Shown: positions 4,804 to 28,300 of the stretch, piece by piece
Position numbering within the stretch: position 1 is the stretch's first letter
Layout of the letters: every line of letters begins with the position of its first letter
Assembly (NCBI RefSeq): GCF_902459465.1
Contig: NC_047079.1
Span: 5,642,001-5,706,000, forward strand
Length of the DNA: 64,000 nucleotides
Reading direction: 5' to 3'
Source of the DNA: Asterias rubens
Taxonomy: Eukaryota
Position numbers and translations under genes: made by a program
The notes under the pieces: model-generated
What the model was told of the DNA's origin: nothing
What the model saw: the letters and a program-made list of their open reading frames with translations, nothing else
The model's database searches: none

Positions 4804-7800
4804 ATGGCGGACAGCGGCAAACAGGCCGGTGATGATTCTAAGCAAGAGTTCAGCAGCCGTATGATGGACGTGGCCTTCAGTGGCCTCAAGTGTGTGGCCA
4901 TTGCGATGGGAAAGGAAACAGGACTCTTTGATGTCATGATCGCCACGGAGACGCCCAAGACCAGCCAAGAAATAGCAGATGCAGGGAATCTTAAAGAGCG
5001 GTAAGTTCTCTTTGTGTTGGTGTTCTGTATTTGGGCGACTATTGCGACTAGTGTCGTATTCACGACTATTTACGTAAAAGCAGCTAATTTTAGCGTGTGC
5101 GCATGCGTACTCCACGTTACTAAGCATTCTACGCTTACACAGCTAGCACAGAAATTTGGTGCTTGCATGTAAGCTGAGAATGGTGATCGTAAGCACAAAA
5201 ATCGCCAATAAGCAGAGCCATGATATTTTGACCAGCTTGAGATTGAGGTTGTTTTTGCTGAGCAGAAACTATTTTTAAAGCAATATTCATAAATACCTCG
5301 TACAGTTTCGCTATTCCTATTGGTGGAGAGCATGTCACGTGGGTGTGTATAAACCTTTGTTGATGACCGGTAAAAAGTGTTGAAACATGGGCGTGACACG
5401 CCTACTTGCACCTGTGCTTATAAGCGGTGAAATTATCAAGAACCAGGCTTCGTTTGGTTTAAAACACTAGTTGAAAACCTCTTCACCACACATTGATTCC
5501 CTTATAAGCTGCTTATATAAAGCAGGTCCTCTATGAAAAAGGGACCTGGGCTCAATTTCATAGAGCCGCTTAAAGGAACACGTTGCCTTGGATCGGTCGA
5601 GTTGGTCTTTGAAAAGCATGTGTAACCGTTTGTTATAAAATGCATATGGGTAGAAAGATGTTGTAAAAGTAGAATACAATGATCCACACAAACATGCCTC
5701 TAAATTGCACTGTTTTCCTTTTACCTCGTAGACTAACACGGTCGGCCATTTATGGGAGTCAAATTTTTTACTCCCATAAATGGCCATGTTAGTTCGCACA
5801 GTAAAAGGAAAACCACGCAATTTCGAGGCAAACTTGTGTGGATCATTGTATTCTACTTTCAAAACATCTTTCCAACCATATGCATTTAAAGAAAAACGGT
5901 TACAAACCACTTTTATAGACAAACTCGTCCGATCCAAGGCAACGTGTTCCTTTAAAGCACACAAAGTAGCTAAGCACAACAAAATTATGCTTACCAAAAT
6001 AAGGTTACTGGCTGCCAAACTGTCATGTCACATGTATAATTTGTGAGTGGTATCCTGCTAACTTTTGCTCATAAAGTTGACCTTTGACATTCGGTAGGTA
6101 TGTGAGAGAGTGGCTTGGTGCCATGGTCACTGCAAAAATAGTGAACTATGACCCCTCAACAGAGACATACTGGATTCCTAAAAGTCATCACTCTATAACG
6201 CAGTTCACTGGATTGGCGATGTGCACCCCATCATTGTCCACAGCATTCTATGATGTAGCGGACAGCTTCAGGAAAGACGGACCCTCAGGTACATAACAGT
6301 GTTCTTTAAGTTTGACAGTAAACGAAGCAGTAGGGAAGTTTGCCTGTCGTTGAGGTCTTCTGTCAGTTTTATAACATATTAAAGGCAGTGGACACTATTG
6401 GTAATTACTCAAAATAATTATTATTTTATTTGTTGATAGTATAAAACATTGTGAGAAACGGCTCCCTTTGAAGTGACGCAGTTTTCGAGAAAGAGGTAAT
6501 TTTCCCTGAATTTGCTTTCGAGACCTCAGAGTTAGATTTTGAGGTCTCAAAATCAAGCAACGGAAAGTGCACAACTTCGTGTGACAAGGGTGTTTTTTTT
6601 TTTCTCACAAGTTTGTTATTTTATGCATATGTGGAGATACACCAAGTGAGAAGACTGGTCTTTGACGATTACCAATAGTGTCCATTGTCTTTAAATCATT
6701 TGATGTGTCTTGGCTGAGCGTAAAGAGAACCAAACTCAAGCTTTGGTGTTTCTCAGGGCTGAAACGTCTTGGAGGCAACGAAGGCGATTGCCTCCATTTG
6801 CCTCCATGGGGCATACCTCAATGCCCCATTGGAGCATGCCTAATGGAGACAACAAAGGCGATTGTCTGCATGCCCCTGGTCATTGCCTTGCTGCCCTTGA
6901 TATGCTGAAGTAGAATTTTACAGTTTCCTCATAGGGTGCCAGATCTTGAATTTCGTTCACGAGGGCACAGCAATTTTCCTCTGGTAAGGGAACTTCTTAT
7001 TATTATTACTTCTATAAGGAAGATTTAAATTTGTACTTGAACTTTGCAAAGGGCACCACAGCAAAACCACAGTGCACCATGGCAATTGCTGTGGGAGCCA
7101 TGAGTTATTTCATGAGCAGGGGGGTGCCCTTTTTACAATGAGAAAATGCCTTGGTGCCCTTGGCTTTTCAAAAACAAAGCCCACAGAACTGGTTTGTGAT
7201 TGCAGAGATTGGGTTCTAGTTCGGGTCTTGAAACTTGTGTTCTTAAAGGGAAGGTATATAACTTTAATAATCACTCTAAACATTTATACTTTTAGTTTGA
7301 CGCCCAACGCAGCTTTCGATTGTATCCAGGGTTTTGAGAAACATTTTACTTTGAAGTTAAGTGGTTGTGTAAAAGGGTTATGTTTCTCAGATTGTGTTTT
7401 AATAATTATTATTTATTATTATTTATTTATTTTAAATCTTGAGACATACACAATAGTTACAAGCTGTACAGGGGCTGACAGGGTTGAAACAAAAGTATAA
7501 AAACTGTAAAAAATATAGGGACTATTCTTCTTGCGTGGACATAATTGGTCGCTCTTGATTTTTGGCGTTATCGTACAAGCGCAATCACCTTTTGAACTGA
7601 AATTTTTACAGGTTAATTTTAAACTACACTTTTTAAGGATGAAAACAAATTTGCCTTTTTTCAAGTGATCTTAGGTGATTTTTTTTTCCTGTTGAATTTT
7701 TGTTTTGCAGGTGTCCCATACTCCAACTATTCTAAATTTGACGACTTGATGGATGGAATGCATGGACCATTGTTTAAAAATGAGCTGGCGGAGTTTACTG

Positions 7801-8716
7801 CGTCGATGCCCGATGTCCAGAAGAAACTTGGTATGTTGATTTAAATTTCATTGTTGTTGTTTATATTCTATTTGCTTATTTATTTTTCAAACAACAAAAT
7901 GTTTCTGGTAGTGAAACCAGCTGACTCTTGAAAAAGCGACGAGCACTTTGATGCTAAGGTAGTTGTGTAGATGAGATGATGAAGAAATGTTCAGTTTTAA
8001 ACGGAGGAAAAACTTGAACAGGGTAAAACGCAGGCAATTCAGGTAGGGCACTTTTGAGACCCTCGCGCAGCAGACAAACCAGTCCTTTTTCGCAGTTTGA
8101 GCGTGCGCGCACATCCTCAGATTTCTTGATCACCTTTTTTACAGAGTCGGGGATAAAAGTGCTTGACATCGGCTGCGGTCCAGGAGCATCTACGTTGGAA
8201 TTCGCCAAACATTTTCCAAAAAGCACCATTTACGGGCTGGATCTCTCGGAGTCGGGCATCAAGAATGCGCAAGAGGTCGCGAAGGTCTCGGGTCTGACCA
8301 ACACCGTATTCCGCTGTCAAGATGTAAGCTCCCTACCATCCGATTGGACGTCTCAATTTGACTACGCTTTTGCCCACATGGTCATCCACGACCTGGCCGA
8401 TCCGCTGAGAGTCCTGAAGGAAATTCTCCGTTTGTTGACACCAGGGGGTGCCCTTTCAGTCCTTGACCCCAACGCTCATTCCAAACTCGAAGATAACATC
8501 TCAGAGGAGAATGAGCATGCCAGTATGTTGTACACCATCAGTATGATGAACTGCATTCCTGCATGTCTTAGTCAGAATGAGGGGAAAGGGGCAGCCTTGG
8601 GTGCCGCCTTGGGACGGGAAAAGGCAACTCTACTTTTGGAGGGGGCCGGGTACCATGTCAAGTCCATAACCAAGGCTCTAGGGGGATCTTTGCATTATCT
8701 GTGCTTCAAGTCTTAG
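4804..8716 (+). CDS. Rv2258c-like class I SAM-dependent methyltransferase (N-terminal winged helix plus MTase)
   Basis: Exons 4804-5000, 6098-6288, 7711-7830 and 8145-8716 join in frame (phases 2, 1, 1). The protein shows LKERYVREWLGAM, GVPYSNY, motif I VLDIGCGPG, GLDLSE, FDYAFAHMVIHDLADP and SMLYTISMMNC, motifs typical of the Rv2258c family. Confidence 0.9.
5574..5951. mobile_element. TTAA-flanked MITE (Kolobok-like), nested inside another MITE in methyltransferase intron 1
   Basis: TIR aggaacacgttgccttggatcgg / ccgatccaaggcaacgtgttcct, with TTAA at 5570-5573 and 5952-5955. It interrupts gggctcaatttcatagagccgct...agcacacaaagtagctaagcac of the ggcccaatttcat family. Confidence 0.85.
6383..6690 (+). 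mobile_element. Abundant TTAA-flanked MITE family (Kolobok-like), copy
   Basis: TTAA|aggcagtggacactattggtaatt ... attaccaatagtgtccattgtct|TTAA, i.e. RR...YY ends with a TTAA TSD. Confidence 0.85.
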
Positions 8717-10349: not shown

Positions 10350-10879
10350 TGAAGCACAACACCGTCACTAATGTTAAAGGCACTGGACTTTTTTTTTTTT
10401 CGAGTCATCAAAGTTGCAAGAAAATATTTAAAGCAAAAGAAAACCCTTTTTGCACAAATTAGTTTGCTTTCACAGATGCATATTAAAAAGCTGTAGGCCT
10501 GAACAAAGTTCTTAGTATCCAAGTGAGAAACTACTTCTTTCTCAAAAACTACGTTACTTTAGAGGGAGCTGTTTCTATCAATGTTTTATACTACCAACAG
10601 CTCTCTATTGCCCATTACGTTTTTATGTTAACAATTATTTTGAGTAATTACCAATATTGTCCAGTGCCTTTAAGCAGGGTCAAAGGTCAACACAAGGTTG
10701 GCTAGCAGTGGTTACATCTTAAACATATCAGTTTACACTACCTTTTTCAACTAGCCCTAAAACTAAAATACTTCAATAAAAAGATTATTGGTAATTAAGA
10801 ACAAACAACTCCCAAAGAGTGCTCATGTGACATTAACTCGAGTAGTAAACAGTATTCTACAAAATTGAGAGAAATGCCA

Positions 10880-11639: not shown

Positions 11640-14600
11640 TCAAATGTCCAAGTAAGTTGTTGTAACGCGATCATCATCCACTTTGCGCTTGATGTACAGA
11701 TAGGACAGTGCCCCTTTCAGCTGCGAATACGTAACCATGTCTTTTCCTTCTCTCCTGTAGCCTATGTTTTGCCCAAAACCAGTTTGTTTTGTCTCCAGAA
11801 CATCGAGGAACTCTTTCTTTCTCAAGTCGTTCTGCTTCTTGTTCAATCCTTTGCTGCTGACCTTGACTTTGTCTCCCCCGAAACATATGTATGTTTTACT
11901 GCACAAAGCCACAACCCCGTCCCCTTCAAATTCCACTTTGAATAGACCGGGAGTGCGCTTGTCGTAGCGTTCATTTTCCGGTGTATCGCGTCGAGGGAAC
12001 CACTTGTCTTTCTCCCGCTCGTACTCTTCCTTCATTTCTGGTTTAATGACGGACTCCAGATTGTTCCCGGCTATGGCAATGTACGCAGAATCGGTGTCCA
12101 TCTGACAGAGCTGGAAGTCAGACCGATCAATGTATTTATCAAGAAATTCGTAGTAGAATTGCAGCATTTTCAGCTTCGCATATTGATACACGAACAGTCC
12201 AATCTGCAGGGGCAGGTCAACCTTGACCGACCGCTTACCCAGTTCAATTTCGTGCACCCCCTCTCCTATATCGGTGGCAGAACGAAACCGCTGGTCGTTA
12301 ATGAACTGACTAGCATGTTTCGCCGTCATGCAAACCTTGACATCCTTGAAGTTCTCCTTGTTGGTCACTGTCTTCCCGTACGCGGAATTCCCAATGAGCT
12401 TCATCGTGTCCGCTCTAGCTGTTGAACCGCTAGCGTCTCCATCTCGTCTTGCGTCACTGACTTCTTTGCCGAACATCTCGAAACAACTACTGGGTCTGTA
12501 CTGAAAAACCTGGTAAATCTCTGTGACTTCGAGGCCGTTTTGGAGATACCACTTAAGCAGAGGGGTGGTGAGGAGGATTTTCTTTCCGCACATACTGCCG
12601 ATGAGTGTTCTCCGAGGCTCCGTGAGAAGCTGGTTACTCTTAGCGAAGCCATACATGTCGTCCCCGATCACGCTTTTCTCACAAGCAATGTCGATGTTCT
12701 TGAAGATAGGCGTCATCTCGCTGAATTTCTCCTTCTTACTGTCAGGCACATTTATATCACACTCAACGAAACCGAATAGATTGCCAGAGCGGATGTGCCT
12801 GATGATTTCTTCTGTTGTCATGGACTTCTTTCTCTGAAGAGGCAACCGCCGTGATTCAAGGAATGACTTCAGTTCCTTGCTGTTGGCTTTCTCCTCTTCC
12901 CACTCACATTCCCACTTCTCTTCAAGCTCATAACCCATACCATAGATTTGGTTTGCTCTCTCTTTGGTTTCTTCAAGTAACTGCTTCATGGTTTTTTTCA
13001 ATGTCTTATTGACCATTTTTTTATTTTTCCAACACCCATGCCCGTGCCAGTAGCAACCATTGAATTCGTACACTGTGTTGGTCTCCTTGCAGTAGCCGTC
13101 AACCTGAAAGCGCGTTGGACCAATTCGCTTCTCCCTGGCATTCCCCTTGTGTTGTATCTTCATCCCTTCTACCTTCGAAGACTCCCATTCCAGCCATTCT
13201 ATTGCCATGGTCATGTGCCCGTGACTGACCTGAGGTTTGAAATCCTTACCCTCTCGCCTTATAAAATGACCGACAGGCATTTCCTGCATCAGGCAACTCA
13301 GATACAGTGCATTGGCGTCATAACCAATGACCTTCTCGCATGGTTTGCCACCGCGGATTTTTGTCTCACCCTTTTCATGGTATCGATGGAAGACTATAGA
13401 CGGACCACCGACGATGTTGTCTTTAAGAGTATGGTAGAAGTCTTTGTGCTTTTTTTCTATCAGTGTGAAGAAATCGTCACCAGGAATACTTTGAACTAAG
13501 TATCGAAGTGACAGACCCGGAGCAGAAGTGCCATCTTTAAACATGTCGATGTTCTTGTCCTTGTAGAATTGGCTCATCTTTTCTACAGCTGTCATGAAGG
13601 GAGCTAAATCACGGGTGCTGTACCATTTCAAGTAGTCTCTCATGGTTCGCATTTTCTTCACATCCCAGACCTCAGTGCAAGTCTTATAGTCCTCAGCAGA
13701 CAGACTGCTAGTTCCAATATGTTCGCTTTCGAATTCTGCTTTAGGCGGAAGAGTCTCTTGATTAAGTTTCTCAAGCGAATCCATCCAACCAAATGGGAAG
13801 AAACCTTCCACTCCTTCGCATTCGTATGATTTTAGAAAATCCGCTAAAGTACATCCCTGAACAAGGTAGTTACTGATGTCCAGGAACTTGAAGAATTCAG
13901 TCTTAATGGCCAAATAAGTGTTGTTTTTTTTGATGACGTACTGAAGTGGGTTCGATTTCTTCAATGAGGTGTACAGATATTGCTTGACGAGATTGATGTC
14001 ATACTTCGAGGATTCGAATCCCAGAACTGGTAACTCCTTAAGGTAGTCCTCGAAATCCTTTCTCAACTTTTTGAGATGTTTTAGGTTGCCTTTTGAGTCT
14101 AGCTCCTTGAAGACAAGTTCTTGAAATTTTTCCATCAGAACTTTGTAAGATGCCTTACTTATTTTGTCCAAGTATTCGATCATCTCGTTGACCAGCTGCT
14201 GGGGATCACCTTTTGAAATGATACACTTAGGTTCTTCAAAGCCTTGCACATTGCTGAGGACACTGACACTCAGAGGGATGTGCTTATACTCAACCCGTGT
14301 TTTGGTGGTCTTCTCGTCCTTTTCAGAAGTGTCCGGAAAACTCTCGAATCTGAAAGTAGCACGGTGCGGAAAGCAGCGATCCTCTGCTGGCACCGATATG
14401 TTCTCATCCAGAAGTCTGTCAAATATTGATGGAGCTGGCCTGTAGACACTGCCAGGAAACCTGTGTTTAATGTCTTTCGAACATTTCGCCTTATGTCTTT
14501 TAAGACCATTGCTCCTACGGAACACCCTCTGGCACCATGTGTTTGTACAACAAAAGGTGTTGCTGTACAAGTTGAAATCTTTGATGTAGGAGAAGTGCCC

Positions 14601-15494
14601 CTTGAACAAATTAAGTTTCATAGTTTTCTTCATAGACATGCGAGATCGAGTGACAAGCTTTGCGAATGTCTTTTTCTGCTCCTGTTTATTGGCGCCTGGT
14701 GTTTTGCGTTGACTTTGAGGAGGCTCTGGTTCGGTATCACCATTTTCACCGTCATCATCATCACCAGACACTCCAACCTCTTCATTTGAAACTTCTTCCT
14801 CTTTCTGTTGTGTGGACTTTATTTTCGAGTGTGGGTTCATGTCACTTGATGCTAGACTGCGACAAAGCTCTGCCTTTGGATTGGCTAATTTGCGTTTAGT
14901 GCAACGATGTCCTGTTTTTGGATTGGCTAATTTGCGTTTACTGCAACGACGTCCTTCCTTTGGTTTGGCTAAATTGCGCGTACTGCGTCTAGGTCCTGCC
15001 TTTGGATTGGCTAACTTGTGTTGACTGCAACCAGGCTCTGCATTTGGATCGACACCACTAGTGTCAAGAGGTTCAACTTCTTCTTCACCGTCGTCATCAT
15101 CCTCCTTACGAGACGATTCATTCCCATCATCGGATGCACCTTCCTCCCCCTCCTCCTCGTCCTCACCCTCCTCCTCCTCCCCCTCTTCATCAGATACCTC
15201 ATCACCTTCTGCTGGAATACTGTAGACCATGATGTTTGTTTCGAACTGTTTCTCTAAATCGGATAACTCTGTCAAAAAAATCCCTTGAAAGTCATCTCCA
15301 CTTATATGCCGTTTCTTCTTGTATTCACCGAATAAACGCGTGGTTTCCTTCTCGCAGTTCTTGATAGAGAAGCCATTGTGAAGAGCCAAACATCTGAAGA
15401 AGCACAGGTTGTCCTCGAACACTTTACCTGTCTGTCTGCTCTTCACGAGTGAATGAAGTCCTCTGTTGTTTTTGAGAAACGGCGGTAGCAACAC
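11640..15494 (-). CDS. polB: Protein-primed family B DNA polymerase (Polinton/Maverick/adintovirus type), main ORF: vOTU-like, zinc finger, exonuclease, and polymerase with a Vsr-like nuclease insertion
   Basis: 1284-aa uninterrupted ORF. Pol motifs A (YDANALY), B (KLIGNSAYGK) and C (QMDTDSAY) are present, plus the pPolB-type IVGGPSIVFHRYHE and GFFPFGW and a C-terminal KRKVDDDRVTTTYL. The OTU-like DNLCFFRCLALH...HFSYI and the endonuclease-like VDGY...YEFNGCYWHG...WECEW are also seen. Confidence 0.93.
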   Translation of the reverse strand: MLLPPFLKNNRGLHSLVKSRQTGKVFEDNLCFFRCLALHNGFSIKNCEKETTRLFGEYKKKRHISGDDFQGIFLTELSDLEKQFETNIMVYSIPAEGDEVSDEEGEEEEGEDEEEGEEGASDDGNESSRKEDDDDGEEEVEPLDTSGVDPNAEPGCSQHKLANPKAGPRRSTRNLAKPKEGRRCSKRKLANPKTGHRCTKRKLANPKAELCRSLASSDMNPHSKIKSTQQKEEEVSNEEVGVSGDDDDGENGDTEPEPPQSQRKTPGANKQEQKKTFAKLVTRSRMSMKKTMKLNLFKGHFSYIKDFNLYSNTFCCTNTWCQRVFRRSNGLKRHKAKCSKDIKHRFPGSVYRPAPSIFDRLLDENISVPAEDRCFPHRATFRFESFPDTSEKDEKTTKTRVEYKHIPLSVSVLSNVQGFEEPKCIISKGDPQQLVNEMIEYLDKISKASYKVLMEKFQELVFKELDSKGNLKHLKKLRKDFEDYLKELPVLGFESSKYDINLVKQYLYTSLKKSNPLQYVIKKNNTYLAIKTEFFKFLDISNYLVQGCTLADFLKSYECEGVEGFFPFGWMDSLEKLNQETLPPKAEFESEHIGTSSLSAEDYKTCTEVWDVKKMRTMRDYLKWYSTRDLAPFMTAVEKMSQFYKDKNIDMFKDGTSAPGLSLRYLVQSIPGDDFFTLIEKKHKDFYHTLKDNIVGGPSIVFHRYHEKGETKIRGGKPCEKVIGYDANALYLSCLMQEMPVGHFIRREGKDFKPQVSHGHMTMAIEWLEWESSKVEGMKIQHKGNAREKRIGPTRFQVDGYCKETNTVYEFNGCYWHGHGCWKNKKMVNKTLKKTMKQLLEETKERANQIYGMGYELEEKWECEWEEEKANSKELKSFLESRRLPLQRKKSMTTEEIIRHIRSGNLFGFVECDINVPDSKKEKFSEMTPIFKNIDIACEKSVIGDDMYGFAKSNQLLTEPRRTLIGSMCGKKILLTTPLLKWYLQNGLEVTEIYQVFQYRPSSCFEMFGKEVSDARRDGDASGSTARADTMKLIGNSAYGKTVTNKENFKDVKVCMTAKHASQFINDQRFRSATDIGEGVHEIELGKRSVKVDLPLQIGLFVYQYAKLKMLQFYYEFLDKYIDRSDFQLCQMDTDSAYIAIAGNNLESVIKPEMKEEYEREKDKWFPRRDTPENERYDKRTPGLFKVEFEGDGVVALCSKTYICFGGDKVKVSSKGLNKKQNDLRKKEFLDVLETKQTGFGQNIGYRREGKDMVTYSQLKGALSYLYIKRKVDDDRVTTTYLDI
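14875..15042 (-). repeat. 42-bp (14-aa) in-frame tandem repeat, 4 units, inside pPolB
   Basis: tttggattggctaa starts at 14875, 14917, 14959 (variant) and 15001. It encodes KLANPKAGPRRSTR/NLAKPKEGRRCSKR/KLANPKTGHRCTKR/KLANPKAE. Confidence 0.9.
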
Positions 15495-17915
15495 CCGATC
15501 GGCAAATCTGGCATCTTGTTCACGTATACAACCATGTTAGTTATCTCGTGTACAGACCATTTTGTACTTGGTTGTGAGGCAAAGTTTAAGGGTTCTTCTT
15601 CCTCGACACTGTGAATAAATTTCATCATATCGTCTCGAGAGGTTATGATAAACGGCGTCTCGAACAATCGGGCATTGTTGTTACTTGGATGAAAATAGCG
15701 TAGCTCATTCGTCTCGCTGTGCCTGAGAAGCAGACCGAATGAGGTGTTCAGCTTACAACGACAGTCAAGCTTCAGAAAAATTGCTAGCAGTTGATTTCTT
15801 TGCATCTCCGACCATTTCGGTTGCTTGTACAGCCGGAAATTGTAAACATCTTGAGCAGGCCGTCCATCCTTCCTGTTGGTGCGAATTTTGGCCCAGTTCT
15901 CCCGTATAATATCCAGAGTGTCTGGACTGTCCAAATTTGATGGAAACTCAAGTGGGTCTTCATCCATGAGAGAAACCTCGTCTTCGTCTTCAGAGTGTGG
16001 AGGGGATTCTTTCTGCACTGCCATGTGAGGGTTCTTTCTGCTCGTGCTGGCCGGTTCACCATCTTCGTTAGTATCGTCGATGGTATGACGTCTTTTGTGG
16101 CCAGGTTTCGTATCATCTGTTTCAGATTCGATTCCACCGAAGAGGTTCTTGGGTTCGAATGCGGCAGTACCTGTGGACCGCTTTTTCTCATGGATGCTTC
16201 TCATATGTCTCTGCAAGGACTGTTTTGTTGCAAAAGGCTTCGAGTTAATACATAACTCACAAACAAACCTTTTGGTGGAGCTCGAAGTCTTCGATGTACT
16301 AGGTTGTCCCTTTGATGTCGACGCCTGTTGGGAAGATCCAGTTGTATCGTGCTGTGACAAGAAAACACAATAACTTTCTATAAGAAACTCAGAGGCTATA
16401 AATACATGAGAAAACATAAATACTTTGCAAGGCTTGACACAAATCAGCTACAATGAACTAATTCTGTTGATATAGTTTTGATCAGAATCGTCTTAAAAAA
16501 ACATTGTGACCTAATGATGTTCTTTCTTTTTGGAACCATGGTGTTTCGGCATATCGTTCCAGTGCATATCCTGGCAGGCAAGACCTGCAGTGGTCATAGC
16601 TTTAAGTTTCGGAACCATTACAAATCAAACATTGTATAAAATAACACACCGACATGTGTTCTGTTGCAGTACTCTTTATTCAAAGAAAGGGGGGGGGGGG
16701 TGCAATATAATTTCCAGTGTTTGTATAATATTCCCACAAAACAAAAACTTCTGGTTAAATGCCAACAATGTGGCTCAATTAACAAAACTAACAAAACAAT
16801 TCATTGACTAATTGTGTTTCGCATAAAGTCCAGGCTCTGTTGTGGTTCCTTGGTAAACTTGTGATGTCACTGGTCACGTGGATTTAACTCCAGGCAGCTT
16901 TTATAACTACCGGTTAAGGTTCATGTTTGTTTGTTACACTTACCTCCTCTTTTGTGTCTTCAGACTTGGGAGTGGAACTTGGGACTCCTAGTGCCTGGTG
17001 AAGAGTATACAAAGTAACACTTCTAATAGGCATATTTATTTTATTTAGTAACACGGAATGAGATGAGGGATAGTGTGGTGTATTTCGCGTGGGATTGCAG
17101 ACAATAAAATACACACACTGTGCAAAGGAGCTGCCATACTGAAAAACGTTTTATTTACTATCCCTGAGGGGATGCAGGTCATGGTGTGACCTTTGACACC
17201 AGCTGTATGCAATATACAGTAGGCCTACTAGTAGCCGAGTGTAGCAAAAGAGAACACCTTTCGTGTAGTACAATTTTTTGTTGACACTTCATATAGTTAT
17301 CATAATTTATTCAAGGTTTCAATTCCCTAAAAAAAAAACCTTTTATCCATAGTTTAACATTGGGAATAGAACGACTTGCAATGTGGTGTGTGAGGCACCA
17401 CTTCCATTTCAATCATTGTGTGCAAAATCTAAGTTTTTCCACTTGTTGATCTAATTTGAAAATGTTTACCAGGAGCGTCACACAGTAATTCTGCATACTA
17501 TCAGGTGACGGCCGAGATGTCTTGCACAGCGGCAATCACAGGAGTCTTAGTTTTGGGTTGAACAAAACCAGTCCCGGTCATGACACTAACTTGTGTCCTT
17601 GACCCAAGATACTTATAATTGCTTCTTTTCACCCAGGGGTATAAAATGGGTACCTGCGAGTGTAGAGATTGTTTTGGTATTATGAACAAGCCTTTGGAGC
17701 GCTACGGTTGCCCACTTGTTGTATACCCCCCCCCCCCCCCATGAGCTAATGAAATATTAAAGGAATTGTTATTGGCCAGAGCGCATTGAGACGGTTATTG
17801 TGAAATGTGCCATATAGTTATTATTATTATAATGTCAATTAACAAATACCACACTATTTACAAACAAAATACGTACGTCATCCTCCATTGAACTGTCAGA
17901 CCCTTGATCAGACAT
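15443..17915 (-). CDS. Spliced N-terminal part of the pPolB gene: acidic leader, C2H2 zinc finger and terminal-protein-like domain; overlaps the main ORF in the -1 frame
   Basis: Exon 17877-17938 (acceptor ttttctttgtcactctttag, ATG at 17915, MSDQGSDSSMEDD, donor gtacgt). Exon 16944-16994 (acceptor tttgtatactcttcaccag, ALGVPSSTPKSEDTKEE, donor gtaagt). Acceptor ttgtgttttcttgtcacag at 16352 leads into HDTTGSSQQ. All junctions are phase 0. C2H2 finger: CELCINSKPFATKQSLQRHMRSIH. Confidence 0.78.
17575..17830 (+). mobile_element. SINE fragment in pPolB intron 2
   Basis: tgtgtccttgacccaagatactt...cacccaggggtataaaatgggtacctgc...agcgcattgagac...ttattattat is a typical conserved-domain SINE body and tail. 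Boundaries are approximate. Confidence 0.6.
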
Positions 17916-18110
17916 CGTCTTTTCGCTTCAACCGTGTCCTAAAGAGTGACAAAGAAAATTATGCAGACCAAACATAATGGATAATTATAAACTTTGAGGC
18001 GCATTCTATTTGATTAACCTCCCTGATAATTTTAAATGAGTTGACAGTGATTTCATTGTCAAGGTCTTGTGATACACTAAAGTCGTTCAGATGGGTTAAA
18101 GCATGGTTAA

Positions 18111-18497
18111 AGGCAGTGGACACTATTGGTAATTACTCAAAATAATTGTTAGCATAAAAACTTACTTCGTGAACGAGCAATGGAGGGAGAGCTGTTGATA
18201 GTTTAAAACATTAGAAACGGCCCTTTCTGAAGTAACGTAGTTTTTGTGAAAAAAGTAATTTCTCACAAAAATATTTAAATTGATTTCGAGGCCGCAGCTG
18301 AGGTCTCGAAATCAAGCATCTGAAAACTTCGTGGGACAAGGGTGTTTTTTTTTCTTCCATTATTCTCTCGCAACATCGGGACCAATTGAGTTCAAATTTT
18401 CACAGGTTTGTTTATAAATGGTGTGCATATGTTGAGATACGCCAAGGAAAGAAGACTGGTCTTTGACAATATTACCAATAGTGTACTTTCCAGTGTC
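18111..18497 (+). mobile_element. TTAA MITE family copy in pPolB intron 1
   Basis: TTAA|aggcagtggacactattggtaattactc ... attaccaatagtgtactttccagtgtct. Confidence 0.8.
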
Positions 18498-18734
18498 TTT
18501 TTTTTTTTTTAGTTTTGTTAATTGAGCCACATTGTTAGCATTTAACCATAAGTTTGGTTCTGTGGGAATATTATACAAAATACTCTTAAAATGAGAAGCT
18601 ACGTCACGTAAAAGAAACAAAACAGCAATTGAATGAGACAAACAGAAAAGAAGACGCATTTCAACACACCAAAAAGTTAAAATTTAAATTGCACGGGCAC
18701 TTCGATATGGCATGTCCTATTGAATGCCTGAATT

Positions 18735-19108
18735 TAAAGACAGCAAAAAAAGTAACTCGGCTGTTGTAAAAGCACCTATAATTTTAAAATCGTTACTCGT
18801 ATTCTAAAATACCAGGAGACGGACAATTTAATTACGGTGATTTTGACACCTTGTTTGTAACAATCGGTCGAGTATTGTTGTTGCGGTATGTGCTTACAGG
18901 TAAAAAGTTCCCGTTTCCATTGTTGCAGTAATTCCTATTGACAAGAGCAGCTTTTCAAAATTCCCGCTATTAGCTTCACGCTGAATCAGAGGAGAGATCA
19001 ACCATGTTAAATTGTCCGTCTTCTGGTATTTTCATTTTTAGAATACGAGTAACAATTTAAAGTTATATGTGCTTTACAACAGCCGAGTTACTTTTTTTGC
19101 TGTCTTTA
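18735..19108. mobile_element. MITE with ~100-bp TIRs in pPolB intron 1
   Basis: taaagacagcaaaaaaagtaactcggctgttgtaaaagcac... / ...gtgctttacaacagccgagttactttttttgctgtcttta. Confidence 0.8.
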
Positions 19109-19207
19109 TATTCGTCTCCGAAATCCAACAGTATATTATTTCAGCCCCAAATGACATCAGCAGCCGCATCGTTTGTAACCCTTTGTTTCCATGCGTTTAT
19201 TGCTCAC

Positions 19208-19300
19208 CGTAAAAATTTCCCCTTTAGGCTTCGCCCCCACGGCAATACGCCGTATCTGAACACGCTGGGGTTTTGCACACCCGCGGGGATGAGGTGATGG
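19208..19300 (-). other. Putative non-coding first exon of the pPolB gene
   Basis: Strong minus-strand donor ACG|GTGAGC at 19208/19207. The segment is GC-rich, lacks an ATG and lies just downstream of the CCAAT cluster. The TSS position is a guess. Confidence 0.5.
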
Positions 19301-19329
19301 ATGACAGCGCGTCGAGACGAGAGCGTTTC

Positions 19330-19370
19330 GGCCAATCAGAAATCGGCCAATCGGAAATCAGCCAATCAGC
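19330..19370 (-). promoter_or_regulatory. Triple CCAAT (NF-Y-type) box cluster, putative pPolB promoter
   Basis: gccaatc at 19331, 19346 and 19361, an exact 15-bp period, in a locally GC-rich patch. Confidence 0.6.
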
Positions 19371-22313: not shown

Positions 22314-25300
22314 ATGGCAAATATCACATCTAAGACCGAGATTGATGGGTTCTCGGCAGGAGTGTCCCTCGCCGTGGTTTCAACCATCTCGCTGATGAGT
22401 AGCATCCTTATGGTGGTCGTTGTCGGTAAAAGACGCAAATCAAGACTCCATCATTCAGAGAGGTTTCTTACTCTATATGGATGCCTAGAAGGGACATACG
22501 CAACGGTGCCGGCCGTCCTATCTACGGTGTCTTATCTGAGCCACCATCAGTGGTCTGTGAATTCGAACGAAGTTATTTGTGACTTCCACGGTTGGATTTC
22601 GTTCGCGACGAAATGCGCATGCGTAGTGGTCACAACAAGTCTCCTCTTGGAGCGATATCTTGAAAAGTCAAGACCGGATCGTAATGGGAGACTTATACCT
22701 AAACAACTGTTTTATGTGTCAGTTTGTTGTGTGTTGGCATCGGGTCTACTTGCGGCTGTGCCTGTCATAGCCGGCCACAAAATGGCGTCGTTTGAACCAA
22801 CTGGAAGCTATTGTCACTTTGACTACAAAGGGACAACAAGTTTGTCACGTGCTTACTCAATATCAATAGTCATAATTGGGTACATCCTTCTACAGGCAGG
22901 TTTGTTTTGCTATATTTCTCTATGTTGTGAAAGGAGACGAGGTCGAGATAAAACCAAACTTATCGGCGTTCATTCAGAGATAAACGGCAACATTTTAAAC
23001 CACGTGACGGACCGTCAACAGAGGACCAAAGAGAGAGGAGGTCATAGATGCGTCACTAGGGGAGATGATGTGCAACCATGGCAACAGAAAATACTTAACG
23101 TCGACGATGATGCTACCTTTACAGCGACGGTTCTTGATGATGAAACTTATTTTACAGCGACGGTTCTTGCTGTCGTCACAATACAGTGGCTGTGCTACCT
23201 GCCCTTTCTGGTGAGTACACTAATATCAATTGGCATCCATTCTCAAATGCACTTACTGTGGACACTAATTACTCAAAATAGTTATTAGCACGAAATCCTT
23301 CAGACATTCACTATAAAATGGTCAGTCGGTCACTCGACTCATAGCATGTTCCACAGACTTGCAAATTCTGTATCAAGCCCCCGCCCCGTATCTTAAGAAA
23401 TCATGAGACCATGATGTTTATCACGTAAAGGGGAAATGGGGAAAGCATTCGAGAAAGACTTTTCTGAGGTCAAACGTCAGGCCCAAAACCTTTTTTTTCT
23501 CTTTTTTTTTAATCAAATAGAGGATTACTTTTTCTGGACTTGAGGTGGGAACGAGTTCGCCAGAAGGGTGCCCACCTTGTGGAAGGCTGTGTGGGATTGA
23601 GGGTCTGACTATAATATTGACTTGGTGCACGGAGAATGTTGGGCCTGCTATTCATTCAAGGCCGTCTTTTGACACTTCCCGACTGCAAAATCGAAACAAG
23701 TATGTAAATCATCCCATGTCACTGACTTCTTATTCCCTAAATGACTCGTAAACGATGGATCTTCATGATCGATTCTGATCGATAAGTCTGCAATCGATTC
23801 TTGGGTGTCGTTTAGAAAAGGCCAACCTCCCGACCCGTCGCAACCCGTCTTAAAGAGGCGTCGTTTAAGCTTTCTTGTGGTTTTTTTTTAATTAGAATTT
23901 ATTCGAACACGTCATGATCGATTTCAATTTGTCTGGATTATTCACAAGACATAATAAATGGTCCCAGGTAAATTCTATTGCCCTCTCGAATCCACGGCTT
24001 CGGCTATGGAATCGGCTTCAGGCTCCGTTCTCTCGTCTGACGCCCTGAGCACATAATGCGTATATCACGCGCTATTGTCAAAACAACAACGGTGCCAAGC
24101 TAGCCTGAGCCGAATCTGGAGCAGAAGCCGAGGTTTCGAAAAGGGCCATAATGGCGTTTATCATAAGCTTCAGAACATTTCGTAAACCTATCGAATCATG
24201 AAACCTACGGTGCTCTGGAAGTGCCATCCGACTTGTTCAGATCCTGAGATAATTATCTCAAGTTCACTCTCCCTTGCCGAGTGTACGTGTCAGTTTCGCT
24301 CTTTTGAGAGTGAAAGTTAATATTTTGTCACTCTTTTTAAGTGAAATTTTAAAGAACTTCACTCTTATTCAAGTTGAAGGTACCCGTCTTTCAGTCTAAG
24401 AAGAGTTGTCCGCCATTATGGCTGTTTGCAAAAGTGGTATGGCGGACAAAAACGATTGTTTTTTCACTCTTTTACATTGCGAGAGAGTATACATCTTAAT
24501 GAAAACAATTTGGGTCTTCATAAGCGACTAAGGCTAAATGTCCAAATTACGAAATTAATTGTCTTTAAATATTTCTTTTTCTTTTTCTGCCACGAACAAA
24601 TAGATCGTTATTGTTATGGCACAGACCGGATATGATGTCACCCCCGAATTGGACTTTGCTGTGGTGCGAATGCTGTCAATAGAGGGGGCTCTCAACCCTT
24701 TAATTGTTCTCTGGAGTTTCCCGCCGTATCGACGGATATTTCAAATCTTGCTATGTGGTCGGTGTAGCAATGGCGGGGAGAAGAAGAAACAAAATGAAGG
24801 ACGTAAGTCAGTTTTGCAGTTGACGCTCGGGGGGAAATAATTGGAGGGTGGTATTGACTGTCATTCAATCCGGTTTCAAAGCAGACGTTAATTTTGGTTT
24901 CATAGCAAAGATAGGGCCTCAGGTCTATGATGCTTCATGAGGCAACGGAGGTGATTGCCTTCATGCCATTGCCTTGGTGCCCTTGAAATGTCCCAGTAGA
25001 AATTTACAATTTCCTCATATACCTTGGTGCCCTGTAGCCCTTTCATAAACGATTGTAGGCCCGTTGCCGTAGAAAACACTGAAAAGGGATTCCTGTTGAA
25101 GCCATGGGTCGCTGCCGAAGTTTAAGCCTAACATAGTTTAAACGAATGCATAGATAACATCAAGGGCTTCTTTTACACAAGAATCTTGAAATGTTAACTT
25201 GTGGGACATGATTTATTTTAAGTGCCAAATTGAATCAAATTAATAGAAGCGCTCTTTTATTTGCAGTGTATAAACCAGAGCACAGGCAAGTGTCACAGTC

Positions 25301-28300
25301 AGTTGTTTACGACTCAACCTTAGGCCTAGATGATACTCCATCATGGTATATGAGCAGACCAAATAGGTGAGACAACTTAAACTATTATTATTTGATGATA
25401 AACAATGGCAAACTGCACGTAACTCTCAGCCAATGATAGTGGTCAATGATGACGTCTTGATGTGCAATTCATCTACTCACACTGTAGCTATCTTTGTCTG
25501 GTTTCATGTATTGCCTCAATTCACCTGGATTTATACGATAAATATGGCACCACTCGGGCATCCCATCCCCTGAACAAAGATATTGACAAAAATTGCGAGA
25601 CCACCAAAATAGGGCTGGTCGCAGGTTGAATCACACTGTGTTCATTTTGTTGTGTACACCTAAAACTGATTTATATGTTAGTCGGGATCCCTTATTCTTC
25701 ATAATTTGATATTTTAAACAAAATTGTATCAGACCTTTTAAATAAAATCTGTAAATACAATCTTCATTAAAAAAAAAATTACTCAAAATAATTATCAGCA
25801 TAAAACCTCACTTTATAACGAGTAATGGGGAGAGGTTGATAGTATAAAACATTGTGAGAAACGGCTCCCTCTGAAGTGACGTAGTTGTCGAGAAAAACGT
25901 AATTTCCCACGAATTTGATTTCGAGACCTCAAGTTTAGAATTTCAGGTCTTGAAATCCACCATCTGAAAGCACACAACTTCGTGTGACAAGGGTGTTTTT
26001 TTCTTTCATAATTATCTCGCAACTCCGACGACCAATCGAGCTCATATTTTCAAAGGTTGGTTATTTTATGCATATATGTTGAGATACACCAAGTGAGAAG
26101 ACTGGTCTTTGACAATTACCAATAGTGTCCACTGTCTTTAAAATTGTATTAGTTTTTGTAACTTTATCATTGCGCTTTGATATAATTTAATTTTGCTGTA
26201 CCAGTTTATGTTATTATATTGCTTCACTGATTAGGTCCCTACCTAAGTCTTACAGTACTGGTGACCTGATTTCGCACAGTCTTGAAGACTCTGTCGAGGG
26301 ACACCATCATCGCGCATCAGTTCGCTCCATCCTCATCCCTTCAAAATCCTCAGAGTTCCTCCCCACCCCACCACATCGCTACTTAGAGAAGCCAAGACGC
26401 AGTATTCACTGGGAAGATGACGTCATGAGTTATCCAGGGGCTAAAGGGGATGTATCAAGGGTCATCCTTGTCAGACGGGGAGCGGATGCAGTGAAGGCTG
26501 GAGGCGAGTCTAATTGTTACGTCAGTGAAGAGGACTCATGCAGCAGTGAGATGAGCTCTCTGAGTGATGATTGGACAACTGGTAATGTCAGACGCGTTCC
26601 CTGTGTTATATACGCCAATCATGTATGTCAATTTCATAAAAAAAGTGCCAGATCATTCGTGGCCGCTGAGACGCGGTTTTCAATTGTTATATTTATAACT
26701 TATAAGTTAGGTATATCGATGTTATCGCACTAATTACTAATACATTAATCAAAATGGTACCGATTGAAAAAAAAAAAAAAATATTTTTTACTTTGCGTTT
26801 CTTTTTTGATAAAAACTTAAAAAACTAACACTTTTGTTATGCACAATCTTTACAGACTCGGGTGAAGGTCCTATGCCTGTTTACATTATCAACGGGAAGG
26901 CCTATTACATCTCCTCACTACAAGACAACAATAGATGTGCTCTTTGCGATTGCAAAGATGATGCAAACCACGATGAAAGGATGCTTGCTGAACAAGAAAA
27001 TCACCAAAGAGCAAGCAACTTTGCGGAGAAGAATGGACGGGTACGTGGAAGAGCAGAACAACGGGCGGCTCGATGCGATCACCCCGCAGCAGAAACTTCC
27101 ACCGCACTGGAGAGAAAAGTTACCATATCTGTCTGTCCGAAGAGTACAAAGCCACGGGTTCTGAGGAAACAGGGAGAACGTCTTAAGAGACTAAAAGATG
27201 AAGCGAGGGTTGAGAAGAGAGAGCAAAGAGGGACAAAGGAAGAAACTATTATCACTGACGACTCCGTCATGCGTCAGGTGCAGGATAGGAACTTTGAATA
27301 TCCTGCTCAGAATTCAAATCAAAATATGGAACTATTCAGCCGGGATCAAATTCATGTCAAGTCTGCATCTAACTTGCCACTGGAATGTTATCAGCGAGAG
27401 AGAAATGTCACCAATCCTGTCTTTATCAATGATGAACAACGCATTGTTTATCATGATCCGGAAAACCACATAGCTCAAAGGGTTGGCAGTCGACAACACG
27501 GTGCAATGGGGATGCTTAATCAAGGGTATTCCCATTCGGATCCTACTGATCTAGGTGCAATCAAAGAGGCTGCCAATTTAGTCTTGGGTATTGGCTGCCG
27601 ACAACAGCAAAACACAGTGGAGACGATTGGTCAAAGCTATCCCCTTCATTGTCATCTTGATCAAGGTTCGATCAGAGAGGGTGAGAAGGAAGTCTCGGGG
27701 CAAGAAAGAGCGGTGCGAGGACGGCTCTCAGATCAGAATAAGGCACCAGAGATGAGTGTGCCTCCTGTAGTTAAACATGCAGACTATAATGAAGTCAGAG
27801 CCGAGATGCTCAACAACGATATTGTTTTAGTAGGAGCTGAGACTGGACAAAAAGGTGTCCTTGTTAACGCTGAACTTCCGCATCTTGGTCGAGGCATGGA
27901 CTCCTTGAAGCATCTGGAGGTACACTGTGAGCAACTTCTGCAGAGGTCTTTGTCTCTTAGAAGTGACAACGGAGAAGGCGAAAAGACTAAAGAGGTTGTG
28001 ACGACAACAGAGACGTCAAATGTCACTGATGGCAAACACACTTGCGTGGAAAATTTCTCATCATACTACATTAATGTTCCTCGAGATGTAGAAAGACCAA
28101 ATGGCTATGAGACGAATTGCAGACACGTCAACAAAGAAGAAATTCAAGTTTTGCATCGTCTACCAACGGCTGATGAGGCTCAAATTACGACAGAAAACCA
28201 CCACCGGATTATTTCCAAAAAGGAACCACAAAATGAAAGTGTTTCTTTGAATAACATCCCAATTAACATGACAGACGCCAGGTATGATGTCGTCAATGAA

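What the first reader, a model, noticed from the sequence alone, without database searches (positions are those of the whole stretch)
11640..19370. Solo, spliced, promoter-bearing Polinton/adintovirus-type DNA polymerase: candidate domesticated pPolB gene
Seen in sequence: a pPolB coding region with no neighbouring retroviral-type integrase, packaging ATPase, protease or capsid ORFs and no detectable TIRs, lying between ordinary host genes. Upstream are two short phase-0 coding exons with textbook splice sites (ATG exon 17877-17938, MSDQGSDSSMEDD; exon 16944-16994). They splice in frame onto an acceptor at 16352 just before the element's own C2H2 finger. A putative non-coding exon 1 and a triple-CCAAT promoter lie further up. 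The introns contain host SINEs and MITEs. Established: Polintons/Mavericks are 15-25 kb TIR elements encoding pPolB with integrase and virion genes, and their genes are normally compact. Inference: a host Pol II transcription unit has captured the viral polymerase gene (~1,600 aa if the frameshift is corrected), which may be a co-opted polymerase or DNA-binding protein of unknown function.
Basis: partly seen in the sequence, partly recalled or inferred. Interest (0 to 1): 0.9.

Follow-up and report, generated by a model that had tools for sequence, protein, structure and literature searches.

The report
Host-kept Polinton DNA polymerase gene
A sea-star (Asterias rubens) gene made from the DNA polymerase of a virus-like Polinton transposon sits alone between ordinary genes, is spliced, has lost its proofreading site but kept its polymerase site, and has been held in frame by selection since the split from A. 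amurensis, although the A. rubens reference copy carries one frameshift.

Summary
The window is Asterias rubens. On the minus strand, 11640-17915, lies a three-exon gene. [quoted passage not shown] Relatives about 50% identical sit inside complete Polintons with ATPase, integrase and protease.

Nothing else of a Polinton is in the window and there are no terminal inverted repeats.

The A. amurensis orthologue lies in the same synteny and is one uninterrupted reading frame. Since the species split:
- dN/dS is 0.14 at family-invariant columns and 1.15 at variable ones.
- Indels in the exon are 10 in frame against 1 frameshift, versus 17 against 61 in flanking DNA.
- Exonuclease catalytic residues are replaced in both species, while all polymerase motifs are intact.

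The A. rubens copy has exactly one frameshift and no stops. I read this as a domesticated, proofreading-dead Polinton polymerase, recently broken, polymorphic or mis-assembled in A. rubens. Expression and function are not shown.

The parts
11640..17915 (-). Coding span of the Polinton-derived polymerase gene (RefSeq LOC117302615 covers its 5' part), from start codon to stop codon. Three coding exons: 17915-17877, 16994-16944, 16351-11640. Broken once: one frameshift, no in-frame stops.
   Evidence: ORFs. Splice model against P0001 and P0126. One uncompensated frame change relative to the uninterrupted A. amurensis ORF. Species and locus.
19208..19330 (-). Putative non-coding first exon. The start is not defined. 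A GT donor follows 19208, and it splices to the acceptor before 17938.
   Evidence: Sequence. One mismatch in about 130 nt against A. amurensis. No transcript data available.
19332..19366 (-). Cluster of three inverted CCAAT boxes (ATTGG at 19362-19366, 19347-19351, 19332-19336), 15 nt apart. Putative promoter.
   Evidence: A. amurensis has four units, three of them intact.
16187..16267 (-). Single C2H2 zinc finger. Relatives carry 2 to 5.
   Evidence: Pfam zf-C2H2_4, E 0.0012. Coordinates. Fingers in relatives.
14856..15065 (-). Tandem 42-nt repeats encoding basic 14-residue units, inside a long acidic/basic linker specific to this lineage.
   Evidence: family D1. Translation. dN/dS of the linker about 1.0.
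14481..14555 (-). Second, CCHC-type finger just before the polymerase. Conserved in the family.
13596..14363 (-). 3'-5' exonuclease domain (Exo I 14337-14363, Exo II 13989-14021, Exo III 13596-13625) with a degenerate active site.
   Evidence: The Exo I Asp (117/117 relatives) is Arg in both species. The Exo II Asn (117/118) is Glu in both. A. amurensis has also lost the Exo II Asp and the Exo III Asp.
11643..13325 (-). Polymerase palm, fingers and thumb: motif A 13296-13325, motif B 12372-12401, motif C 12081-12104, KxY 11880-11903. All key residues intact.
   Evidence: dN/dS 0.22 for the part after the Vsr-like insert.
12900..13106 (-). Vsr-type endonuclease domain inserted in the polymerase.
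   Evidence: phmmer against 1vsr/1odg/1cw0, E 0.004. Pfam Vsr in 5 of 35 relatives. Described for pPolB2 in PMC10748475. Excess of amino-acid replacements here.
18103..18500 (.). Copy of an interspersed host repeat (10 or more copies in the window) inside the 5' intron. Another copy at 10523-10676 lies 3' of the gene.
18730..19113 (.). MITE-like unit with inverted arms of about 100 nt (18730-18831 / 19007-19113) inside the 5' intron.
4804..8713 (+). Neighbouring host gene: SAM-dependent methyltransferase, four exons, 98% identical to A. amurensis.
22314..23288 (+). Neighbouring host gene: rhodopsin-family receptor ORF.
   Evidence: Same neighbour in A. amurensis. dN/dS 0.59.

Best explanation
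A Polinton of the pPolB2 class (polymerase with a Vsr-nuclease insert and N-terminal zinc fingers), or a polymerase-only derivative of one, inserted before the A. rubens / A. amurensis split. It lost its terminal repeats and became a fixed, single-copy host gene with a conserved CCAAT-box promoter and two small 5' exons.

Shown:
- The frame and the family-conserved residues have been kept by selection acting at this locus.
- The exonuclease active site is dead.
- The polymerase active site is intact.

Inferred:
- The product is a nuclear, DNA-binding DNA polymerase without proofreading.
- Its most likely substrates are the ends of related Polinton-type elements that still multiply in the same genomes, either as host interference with them or as a leftover replication helper. 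A role in host DNA repair is the alternative.

The A. rubens reference copy has one frameshift and no other damage. That break is therefore very recent, polymorphic, or an assembly error.
For: Orthology:
- The whole 28.6 kb A. amurensis locus is collinear with the window at 90-95% identity, with the same receptor and methyltransferase neighbours.
- The A. amurensis copy is one open frame of 1629 codons.

Selection in situ:
- dN/dS is 0.14 at the 310 columns that are at least 90% conserved in 119 relatives (9 non-synonymous against 17 synonymous differences). It is 0.59 at intermediate columns and 1.15 at variable ones.
- Indels in the exon are 10 in frame against 1 out of frame, versus 17 against 61 in 8.9 kb of collinear non-coding DNA (Fisher p 1.5e-5).
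- Changes at conserved columns are symmetric between the two lineages (2 against 2).

Active sites:
- Exo I Asp to Arg and Exo II Asn to Glu are shared by both species. Two further catalytic Asp residues are lost in A. amurensis.
- Motifs A, B, C and KxY are unchanged.

Copy number and mobility:
- The 90% cluster of P0001 has one member, and the next relative is 51% identical.
- There are no TIRs and no other Polinton genes.

Other:
- The promoter and leader are about 99% conserved, against about 96% for other non-coding DNA.
- The fold is that of phi29 polymerase.
- Polinton origin: relatives lie next to Pox_A32 ATPase, rve integrase and Peptidase_C5 genes.
Against: - Only two closely related species could be compared (non-coding distance about 0.04), so the counts are small.
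- Overall dN/dS of the downstream-frame piece is 0.57, no lower than the neighbouring receptor gene at 0.59.
- dN in that piece is close to the non-coding distance.
- One of the two species carries a frameshift that removes the polymerase part from the annotated product. It does not lie in a mononucleotide run, which is where long-read assembly errors usually fall.
- No transcript or protein evidence was available.
- No orthologue was seen in other sea stars.
- The Vsr-like insert shows an excess of replacements that I cannot explain.
- The cellular role is inference only.
Confidence: 0.6

Rival explanations
1. The gene is dying, or already dead, in A. rubens. The frameshift is real and fixed, so only a short zinc-finger plus N-domain product is made. 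The selection signal comes from the time before the break and from the A. amurensis lineage.
For: - There is one uncompensated frameshift, and it is not in a mononucleotide run.
- RefSeq annotates only the short N-terminal product.
- A conserved His of the Vsr-like motif is replaced on the A. rubens side.
Against: - The downstream frame has no stop over its whole length.
- There is no excess of changes at conserved columns on the A. rubens side (2 against 2 at 90% conservation, 6 against 7 at 70%).
- All other indels keep the frame.
- If real, the break must therefore be very young.
Confidence: 0.3
2. The gene is a neutral relic: an immobilised fragment of a Polinton that is simply too young to have decayed. 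The apparent constraint is chance.
For: - Divergence between the two species is low (about 4% in non-coding DNA).
- Overall dN/dS is moderate at 0.57.
- No orthologue was found outside Asterias.
Against: - dN/dS falls from 1.15 to 0.14 with rising family conservation.
- The ratio of in-frame to out-of-frame indels differs from flanking DNA at p 1.5e-5, and indels are fewer per kb.
- Loss is selective: the exonuclease site has gone while the polymerase motifs are untouched.
- The promoter and leader are conserved.
Confidence: 0.12
3. The gene is still a mobile element: a polymerase-only Polinton derivative like the multi-copy paralogues, caught at a shared insertion site.
For: Polymerase-only elements bounded by long inverted repeats exist in A. 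amurensis and Patiria miniata, in several near-identical copies.
Against: - There are no long inverted repeats within 1-40000 of the window.
- The lineage is single copy in its 90% cluster.
- It sits at the same position, with collinear flanks and introns, in two species.
- Its exonuclease site is dead, unlike all 117 relatives compared.
Confidence: 0.03

Closest known systems
pPolB2-class Polinton polymerases with a VSR nuclease insertion (Jeong et al. 2023, Mol Biol Evol, PMC10748475)
   Same: - It is a protein-primed family B polymerase with a Vsr-type endonuclease domain inserted in the polymerase part.
- It comes from a marine invertebrate, and the paper lists Echinodermata among phyla with pPolB2.
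   Different: - The paper describes polymerases inside Polintons. Here the gene is alone, single copy, syntenic in two species, spliced, and has a dead exonuclease site.
- Zinc fingers are not mentioned in the paper (0 occurrences of 'zinc').
Complete Polintons/Mavericks of marine invertebrates (loci L004, L005, L006 fetched here)
   Same: The polymerase is 43-50% identical, with the same order of domains, including N-terminal C2H2 fingers in L006.
   Different: - Those loci carry a Pox_A32-type ATPase, an rve (+chromo) integrase, a protein of about 445 aa and a Peptidase_C5-like protease next to the polymerase.
- The window has none of them and no terminal repeats.
Polymerase-only, TIR-bounded paralogues in sea stars (L011 in A. 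amurensis, L003 in Patiria miniata)
   Same: - The host group is the same, and the multi-domain polymerase is the only long ORF.
- They have a short 5' exon plus an intron.
   Different: - They are multi-copy (2 to 4 loci per 90% cluster).
- Their inverted repeats are 0.4-0.6 kb or 4.4 kb long and 96-100% alike.
- Their exonuclease motifs are intact.
- They are only about 50% identical to the window's protein.
phi29 DNA polymerase (PDB 2pyj, 1xhx, 2ex3)
   Same: It is the best structural match of the window's polymerase part (E 4e-13, target TM 0.70).
   Different: - Sequence identity is about 10%.
- phi29 has an active exonuclease, no Vsr-like insert, no fingers and no long N-terminal region.
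Ancient Maverick integrations conserved at orthologous loci in placental mammals (Barreat and Katzourakis 2022, PMC9683012)
   Same: Maverick-derived polymerase sequence fixed at a syntenic locus in several host species.
   Different: The mammalian relics are degraded fragments with no open frame. Here the frame is open in one species and broken once in the other, with a signal of selection.
Cellular family B polymerases with an inactivated exonuclease domain (Pol alpha, Pol zeta; from my own knowledge, not tested here)
   Same: The exonuclease fold is kept but its catalytic carboxylates are lost, while the polymerase stays active.
   Different: They are unrelated lineages within family B that are not protein-primed, and they are not derived from a mobile element.

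Membership tests
[quoted passage not shown] | Polymerase motifs A (Dx2SLY type), B (Kx3NSxYG), C (DTD) and KxY | tested here: met
   All key residues are present in the window and in A. amurensis, and are invariant or nearly so in 119 relatives.
[quoted passage not shown] | 3'-5' exonuclease motifs Exo I, II and III with their catalytic Asp/Glu/Asn | tested here: not met
   The Exo I Asp is Arg and the Exo II Asn is Glu in both species. The fold is kept (pLDDT high), but the site is degenerate. This probably explains why Pfam PF03175 misses the window's piece.
[quoted passage not shown] | Fold like phi29 polymerase | tested here: met
   Foldseek against PDB: the top five hits are all phi29 polymerase, E 4e-13 to 9e-12, target TM 0.66-0.70.
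pPolB2 subgroup with VSR nuclease insert (PMC10748475) | Vsr-type endonuclease domain inserted in the polymerase | tested here: met
   phmmer E 0.004 to E. coli Vsr chains, with the metal-binding Cys/His block aligned. Pfam Vsr in 5 of 35 relatives. Placement in the pPolB2 clade by phylogeny was not tested.
Polinton/Maverick element (the locus as an element) | Retroviral-type integrase, packaging ATPase, adenain-like protease and capsid genes next to the polymerase | tested here: not met
   No credible tblastn match of 21 such proteins from L004-L006 in the window or in L001. They are present next to relatives.
Polinton/Maverick element (the locus as an element) | Terminal inverted repeats and a 6-bp target-site duplication | tested here: not met
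   No long inverted repeat lies round the gene. The one flanking pair is an interspersed host repeat. The duplication is not testable without element ends.
Domesticated (exapted) mobile-element gene | Same genomic position in different species | tested here: met
   The locus is collinear, with the same neighbours, in A. amurensis. The Patiria locus was not informative.
Domesticated (exapted) mobile-element gene | Open reading frame kept | tested here: inconclusive
   Uninterrupted in A. amurensis. One frameshift and no stops in the A. rubens reference.
Domesticated (exapted) mobile-element gene | Purifying selection acting after fixation at the locus | tested here: met
   dN/dS gradient of 0.14 / 0.59 / 1.15 by family conservation. 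Indel frame test p 1.5e-5. Only two species were compared.
Domesticated (exapted) mobile-element gene | Single copy, loss of mobility | tested here: met
   The 90% cluster has one member, and the next relative is 51% identical. There are no TIRs. Tested at the level of annotated proteins, not whole-genome DNA.
Domesticated (exapted) mobile-element gene | Expression as a host transcript | not testable with these tools
   Only RefSeq gene models with the same exons in both species are available. No read data.
OTU-type cysteine protease domain (N-terminal region of the family) | OTU fold with a catalytic Cys and His | tested here: inconclusive
   An invariant Cys (99/99) and a conserved downstream His block are present. 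The model of a relative's N-terminus has no PDB hit at E<=1e-3, but several OTU domains appear at probability 0.75-0.82. There is no Pfam OTU hit.
   No animal-virus comparator was fetched. No tool returned one as a named hit.

The most novel reading that the evidence does not exclude
Sea stars keep a host gene for a proofreading-dead, protein-primed DNA polymerase taken from a Polinton. The same genomes also hold a still-multiplying family of polymerase-only elements bounded by long inverted repeats, which would be minimal self-synthesising transposons without integrase or capsid genes. The host copy would act on the ends of those elements, as an interfering or error-prone replicase. That would make it the first case of a domesticated Polinton polymerase used against, or alongside, its mobile relatives.
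Probability: 0.15. Interest if true: 0.85.

Novelty: new variant of a known kind. Interest (0 to 1): 0.62.

Why it matters
Host genes are known to derive from transposases, integrases, capsid and envelope genes. I found no report of a Polinton/Maverick polymerase kept as a host gene.

A family B polymerase that keeps its catalytic centre but has lost proofreading, and that carries a nuclease insert and a zinc finger, would be a new kind of raw material for host DNA metabolism or for defence against virus-like transposons.

The locus is small, has an intact orthologue, and has mobile relatives in the same genomes. The question of whether and how a viral replicase is co-opted can therefore be approached with expression, population and comparative data.

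If the A. rubens frameshift is real, the pair of species also shows a domesticated gene at the moment of loss.

Tried and rejected
- Pfam on the window's own two frame pieces gave no polymerase hit. I relied on relatives, motifs and fold instead.
- A profile search of PDB sequences with the family alignment was swamped by C2H2 finger proteins and said nothing about the polymerase.
- The flanking inverted pair 10523-10676 / 18104-18266 looked like TIRs but is an interspersed repeat. The same repeat also flanks the polymerase in L011. Its arms there are only 81% alike while the true TIRs are 96-100% alike, so I treat these as independent insertions.
- Synteny in Patiria miniata shows a tandem array of methyltransferase genes with no receptor and no polymerase, so it says nothing about the age of the insertion.
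- A methyltransferase next to paralogue P0002 suggested an old segmental duplication, but it is unrelated.
- A compensated frameshift as the cause of the replacement cluster in the Vsr-like insert was rejected. The other frame-changing alignment events are adjacent pairs that restore the frame at once.
- A 95-nt piece conserved 3' of P0002 and P0003 has no tRNA or Rfam match and is not present in the window.
- The fold search of the N-terminal domain was inconclusive.
- Literature searches for zinc-finger pPolB or a domesticated pPolB found nothing.
- I did not scan viral contig collections or fetch animal-virus comparators.

Full report
**What is there**

The window is Asterias rubens, assembly GCA_902459465.3, record LR699109.1. 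On the minus strand two long ORFs in different frames follow each other with a short overlap.

The upstream-frame piece holds one C2H2 finger. The downstream-frame piece holds family B polymerase motifs and a Vsr-like block. I treated the two pieces apart throughout.

A search with the polymerase part found more than 2,200 relatives. The best is a 1627-aa 'uncharacterized protein' of A. amurensis (P0001, 91% identical). All others are 51% identical or less. They come from echinoderms, amphioxus, cnidarians and molluscs, usually with C2H2 fingers and PF03175. A full HMMER pass finds 14,419 clusters at E<=1e-3 and 1,222 at E<=1e-30.

**Is it a Polinton polymerase?**

- An AlphaFold2 model of the window's polymerase part (window:11643-14507:-) has pLDDT 87.4 and pTM 0.85. 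Its five best PDB matches are all phi29 DNA polymerase (E 4e-13, target TM 0.70).
- Relatives P0009, P0056 and P0103 (43-50% identical) lie directly upstream of a Pox_A32-type ATPase, an rve integrase (with a chromodomain in two of them), a protein of about 440 aa and a Peptidase_C5-like protease. These are complete Polintons.
- The block inserted in the polymerase aligns to E. coli Vsr chains (E 0.004). Pfam Vsr hits 5 of 35 relatives.
- Jeong et al. 2023 (PMC10748475) describe exactly this class: pPolB2 polymerases of marine Polintons with a VSR nuclease insertion, with pPolB2 also recorded in Echinodermata.

**Solo state**

- None of 21 non-polymerase proteins from the three complete Polintons matches the window credibly. 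None matches the A. amurensis locus or the two paralogue loci.
- The one inverted pair that brackets the gene is made of two copies of a repeat of about 400 nt. That repeat has at least ten copies in the window, and the two arms are no more alike than any other pair.
- No long inverted repeat exists in 1-40000.
- The 5' intron holds that repeat (18103-18500) and a MITE-like unit (18730-19113).

**Gene structure**

- The ATG is at 17915.
- Exon 1 is 17915-17877 (13 codons). Exon 2 is 16994-16944 (17 codons). Exon 3 begins at 16351. All junctions are GT/AG.
- Joined as they stand, the exons give the N-terminus of P0001 and of the A. rubens RefSeq protein LOC117302615 (P0126).
- Further upstream there are three inverted CCAAT boxes at 19332-19366, 15 nt apart. 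About 120 nt downstream of them there is a GT donor after 19208. A pyrimidine-rich acceptor precedes 17938.
- From the boxes to the donor, A. rubens and A. amurensis differ at one position in about 130. Other non-coding DNA differs at 3.5-4.5%. This is suggestive but weak.

**Orthology and state of the frame**

P0001 lies in A. amurensis between a 7tm_1 receptor gene and the same methyltransferase gene. The 28.6-kb locus is collinear with the window at 90-95% identity, introns included. There the large exon is one ORF of 1629 codons.

Relative to it, the A. rubens copy has one uncompensated frame change and no stop. The change is not in a mononucleotide run. Because of it, RefSeq annotates only a short N-terminal product in A. 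rubens, without the polymerase part.

**Selection**

Nei-Gojobori dN/dS against A. amurensis, for each frame piece on its own:

| Piece | dN/dS | Bootstrap range |
|---|---|---|
| Upstream-frame piece | 0.28 | 0.12-0.65 |
| Downstream-frame piece | 0.57 | 0.39-0.83 |

By region of the downstream-frame piece:

| Region | dN/dS |
|---|---|
| Acidic/basic linker | about 1.0 |
| Second finger plus start of the exonuclease domain | 0.35 |
| Part after the Vsr-like insert | 0.22 |
| Vsr-like insert (about 21 non-synonymous, 1 synonymous difference) | about 3 |

The overall value is no lower than that of the neighbouring receptor gene (0.59). Two sharper tests were therefore used.

- First test: codons were sorted by how conserved their column is in 119 relatives.
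  - dN/dS is 0.14 at columns at least 90% conserved (9 non-synonymous, 17 synonymous differences in 310 codons).
  - It is 0.59 at intermediate columns and 1.15 at variable ones.
  - The upstream piece shows the same order. Neutral decay at a fixed locus would not know which columns the family conserves.
- Second test: indels since the split.
  - In the large exon, 10 keep the frame and 1 does not.
  - In 8.9 kb of collinear non-coding DNA the counts are 17 and 61 (Fisher p 1.5e-5).
  - Indels are also several times rarer per kb in the exon.
- Symmetry: changes at conserved columns are 2 on each lineage at 90% conservation, and 6 against 7 at 70%. The A. rubens lineage shows no sign of long relaxation.

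**Active sites**

- The Exo I Asp, present in 117 of 117 relatives, is Arg in both species.
- The Exo II Asn (117 of 118) is Glu in both.
- A. amurensis has in addition replaced the Exo II Asp and the Exo III Asp.
- Motifs A, B, C and KxY are identical in the two species and carry every family-invariant residue.
- The Vsr-like block keeps its Asp, Cys and His residues, except for one conserved His replaced in A. rubens.
- The pair deviates from the family residue at 10% of highly conserved columns, against a family median of 2.3%.

**The paralogues are different**

- The sea-star relatives about 50% identical (P0002 and P0006 in A. amurensis, P0003 in Patiria) occur as 2 to 4 near-identical loci on different chromosomes.
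- They have intact exonuclease motifs.
- They are bounded by long inverted repeats: about 0.4-0.6 kb at 96-100% in L011 (element about 9.6 kb), and about 4.4 kb at 99-100% in L003 (element about 17 kb).
- The polymerase is their only recognisable gene.
- They also have a short 5' coding exon and an intron.
- Polymerase-only mobile elements therefore exist in these genomes and are a plausible source of the window's gene. The spliced layout need not be a host capture.

**Interpretation**

Shown:
- Polinton origin of the polymerase.
- Solo, single-copy, syntenic position.
- Splice model shared by two annotations.
- Selection for the frame and for family-conserved residues at this locus.
- A dead exonuclease site and an intact polymerase site.
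- One frameshift in the A. rubens reference.

Inferred:
- The product is a DNA-binding polymerase without proofreading.
- It is made from the CCAAT promoter.
- It acts on ends of related elements or in host DNA metabolism.

I put 0.6 on host-level maintenance (domestication) up to at least very recently. I put about 0.3 on the A. rubens allele being truly broken rather than polymorphic or mis-assembled.

**Limits**

- Only two close species were compared.
- There were no read data.
- Copy number was judged from annotated proteins.
- Likeness to adintoviruses was not tested.

**Slips that I must declare**

- One search printed the lengths of successive same-frame stretches, which amounts to places of frame changes. 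One search printed indel sizes.
- I dropped them and used the tool alignment instead.

Noticed in passing
L011:11262-20899 (A. amurensis); L003:4079-21070 (Patiria miniata): Multi-copy elements bounded by long inverted repeats (about 0.4-0.6 kb, and about 4.4 kb at 99-100%). Their only recognisable gene is the zinc-finger polymerase. No integrase, ATPase, protease or capsid gene was found. They may be minimal Polinton derivatives. Each arm of the Patiria element carries a 142-aa ORF without a Pfam match.
   Followed up: partly
L002:16022-16115 and L003:16164-16258: A 95-nt non-coding piece, 88% identical between A. amurensis and Patiria, lies about 940 nt 3' of the polymerase stop and contains an AATAAA. 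It is far better conserved than the proteins (63%). It has no tRNA or Rfam match and is absent from the window.
   Followed up: partly
window 12900-13106: The Vsr-like insert holds a cluster of amino-acid replacements between the two Asterias species (about 21 non-synonymous against 1 synonymous), spread over both lineages. It is not explained by a shifted frame. It could be positive selection or chance.
   Followed up: partly
window 14856-15065: Four to five tandem 42-nt units encode basic 14-residue repeats inside a linker of about 230 residues. Relatives lack this linker. It may be a nuclear localisation or DNA-binding stretch.
   Followed up: no
L001:13751-18640: The A. amurensis RefSeq protein is 30 residues shorter than the sum of its exons would give. 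The model therefore removes 90 nt in frame from the large exon, probably in the repetitive linker.
   Followed up: no
window 26834-29893 (+) and 52566-54182 (-): Two long ORFs (1019 and 538 aa) of low-complexity, Ser/Arg/Asn-rich sequence without Pfam matches. They are probably large exons of host genes. The first shows a strong positive AT skew.
   Followed up: no
window 59914-60576 (-): An exon of an animal haem peroxidase gene (Pfam An_peroxidase, E 1e-61).
   Followed up: no
window 18103-18500 and at least ten other places (e.g. 41514-41898, 51900-52275, 25777-26139): An interspersed repeat of about 400 nt, at roughly one copy per 6 kb. It is also frequent in A. amurensis loci, including just inside both ends of the L011 element.
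   Followed up: partly
L009 (Patiria miniata): The methyltransferase neighbour is a tandem array of at least three paralogues in Patiria, whereas the Asterias loci examined show a single copy.
   Followed up: no
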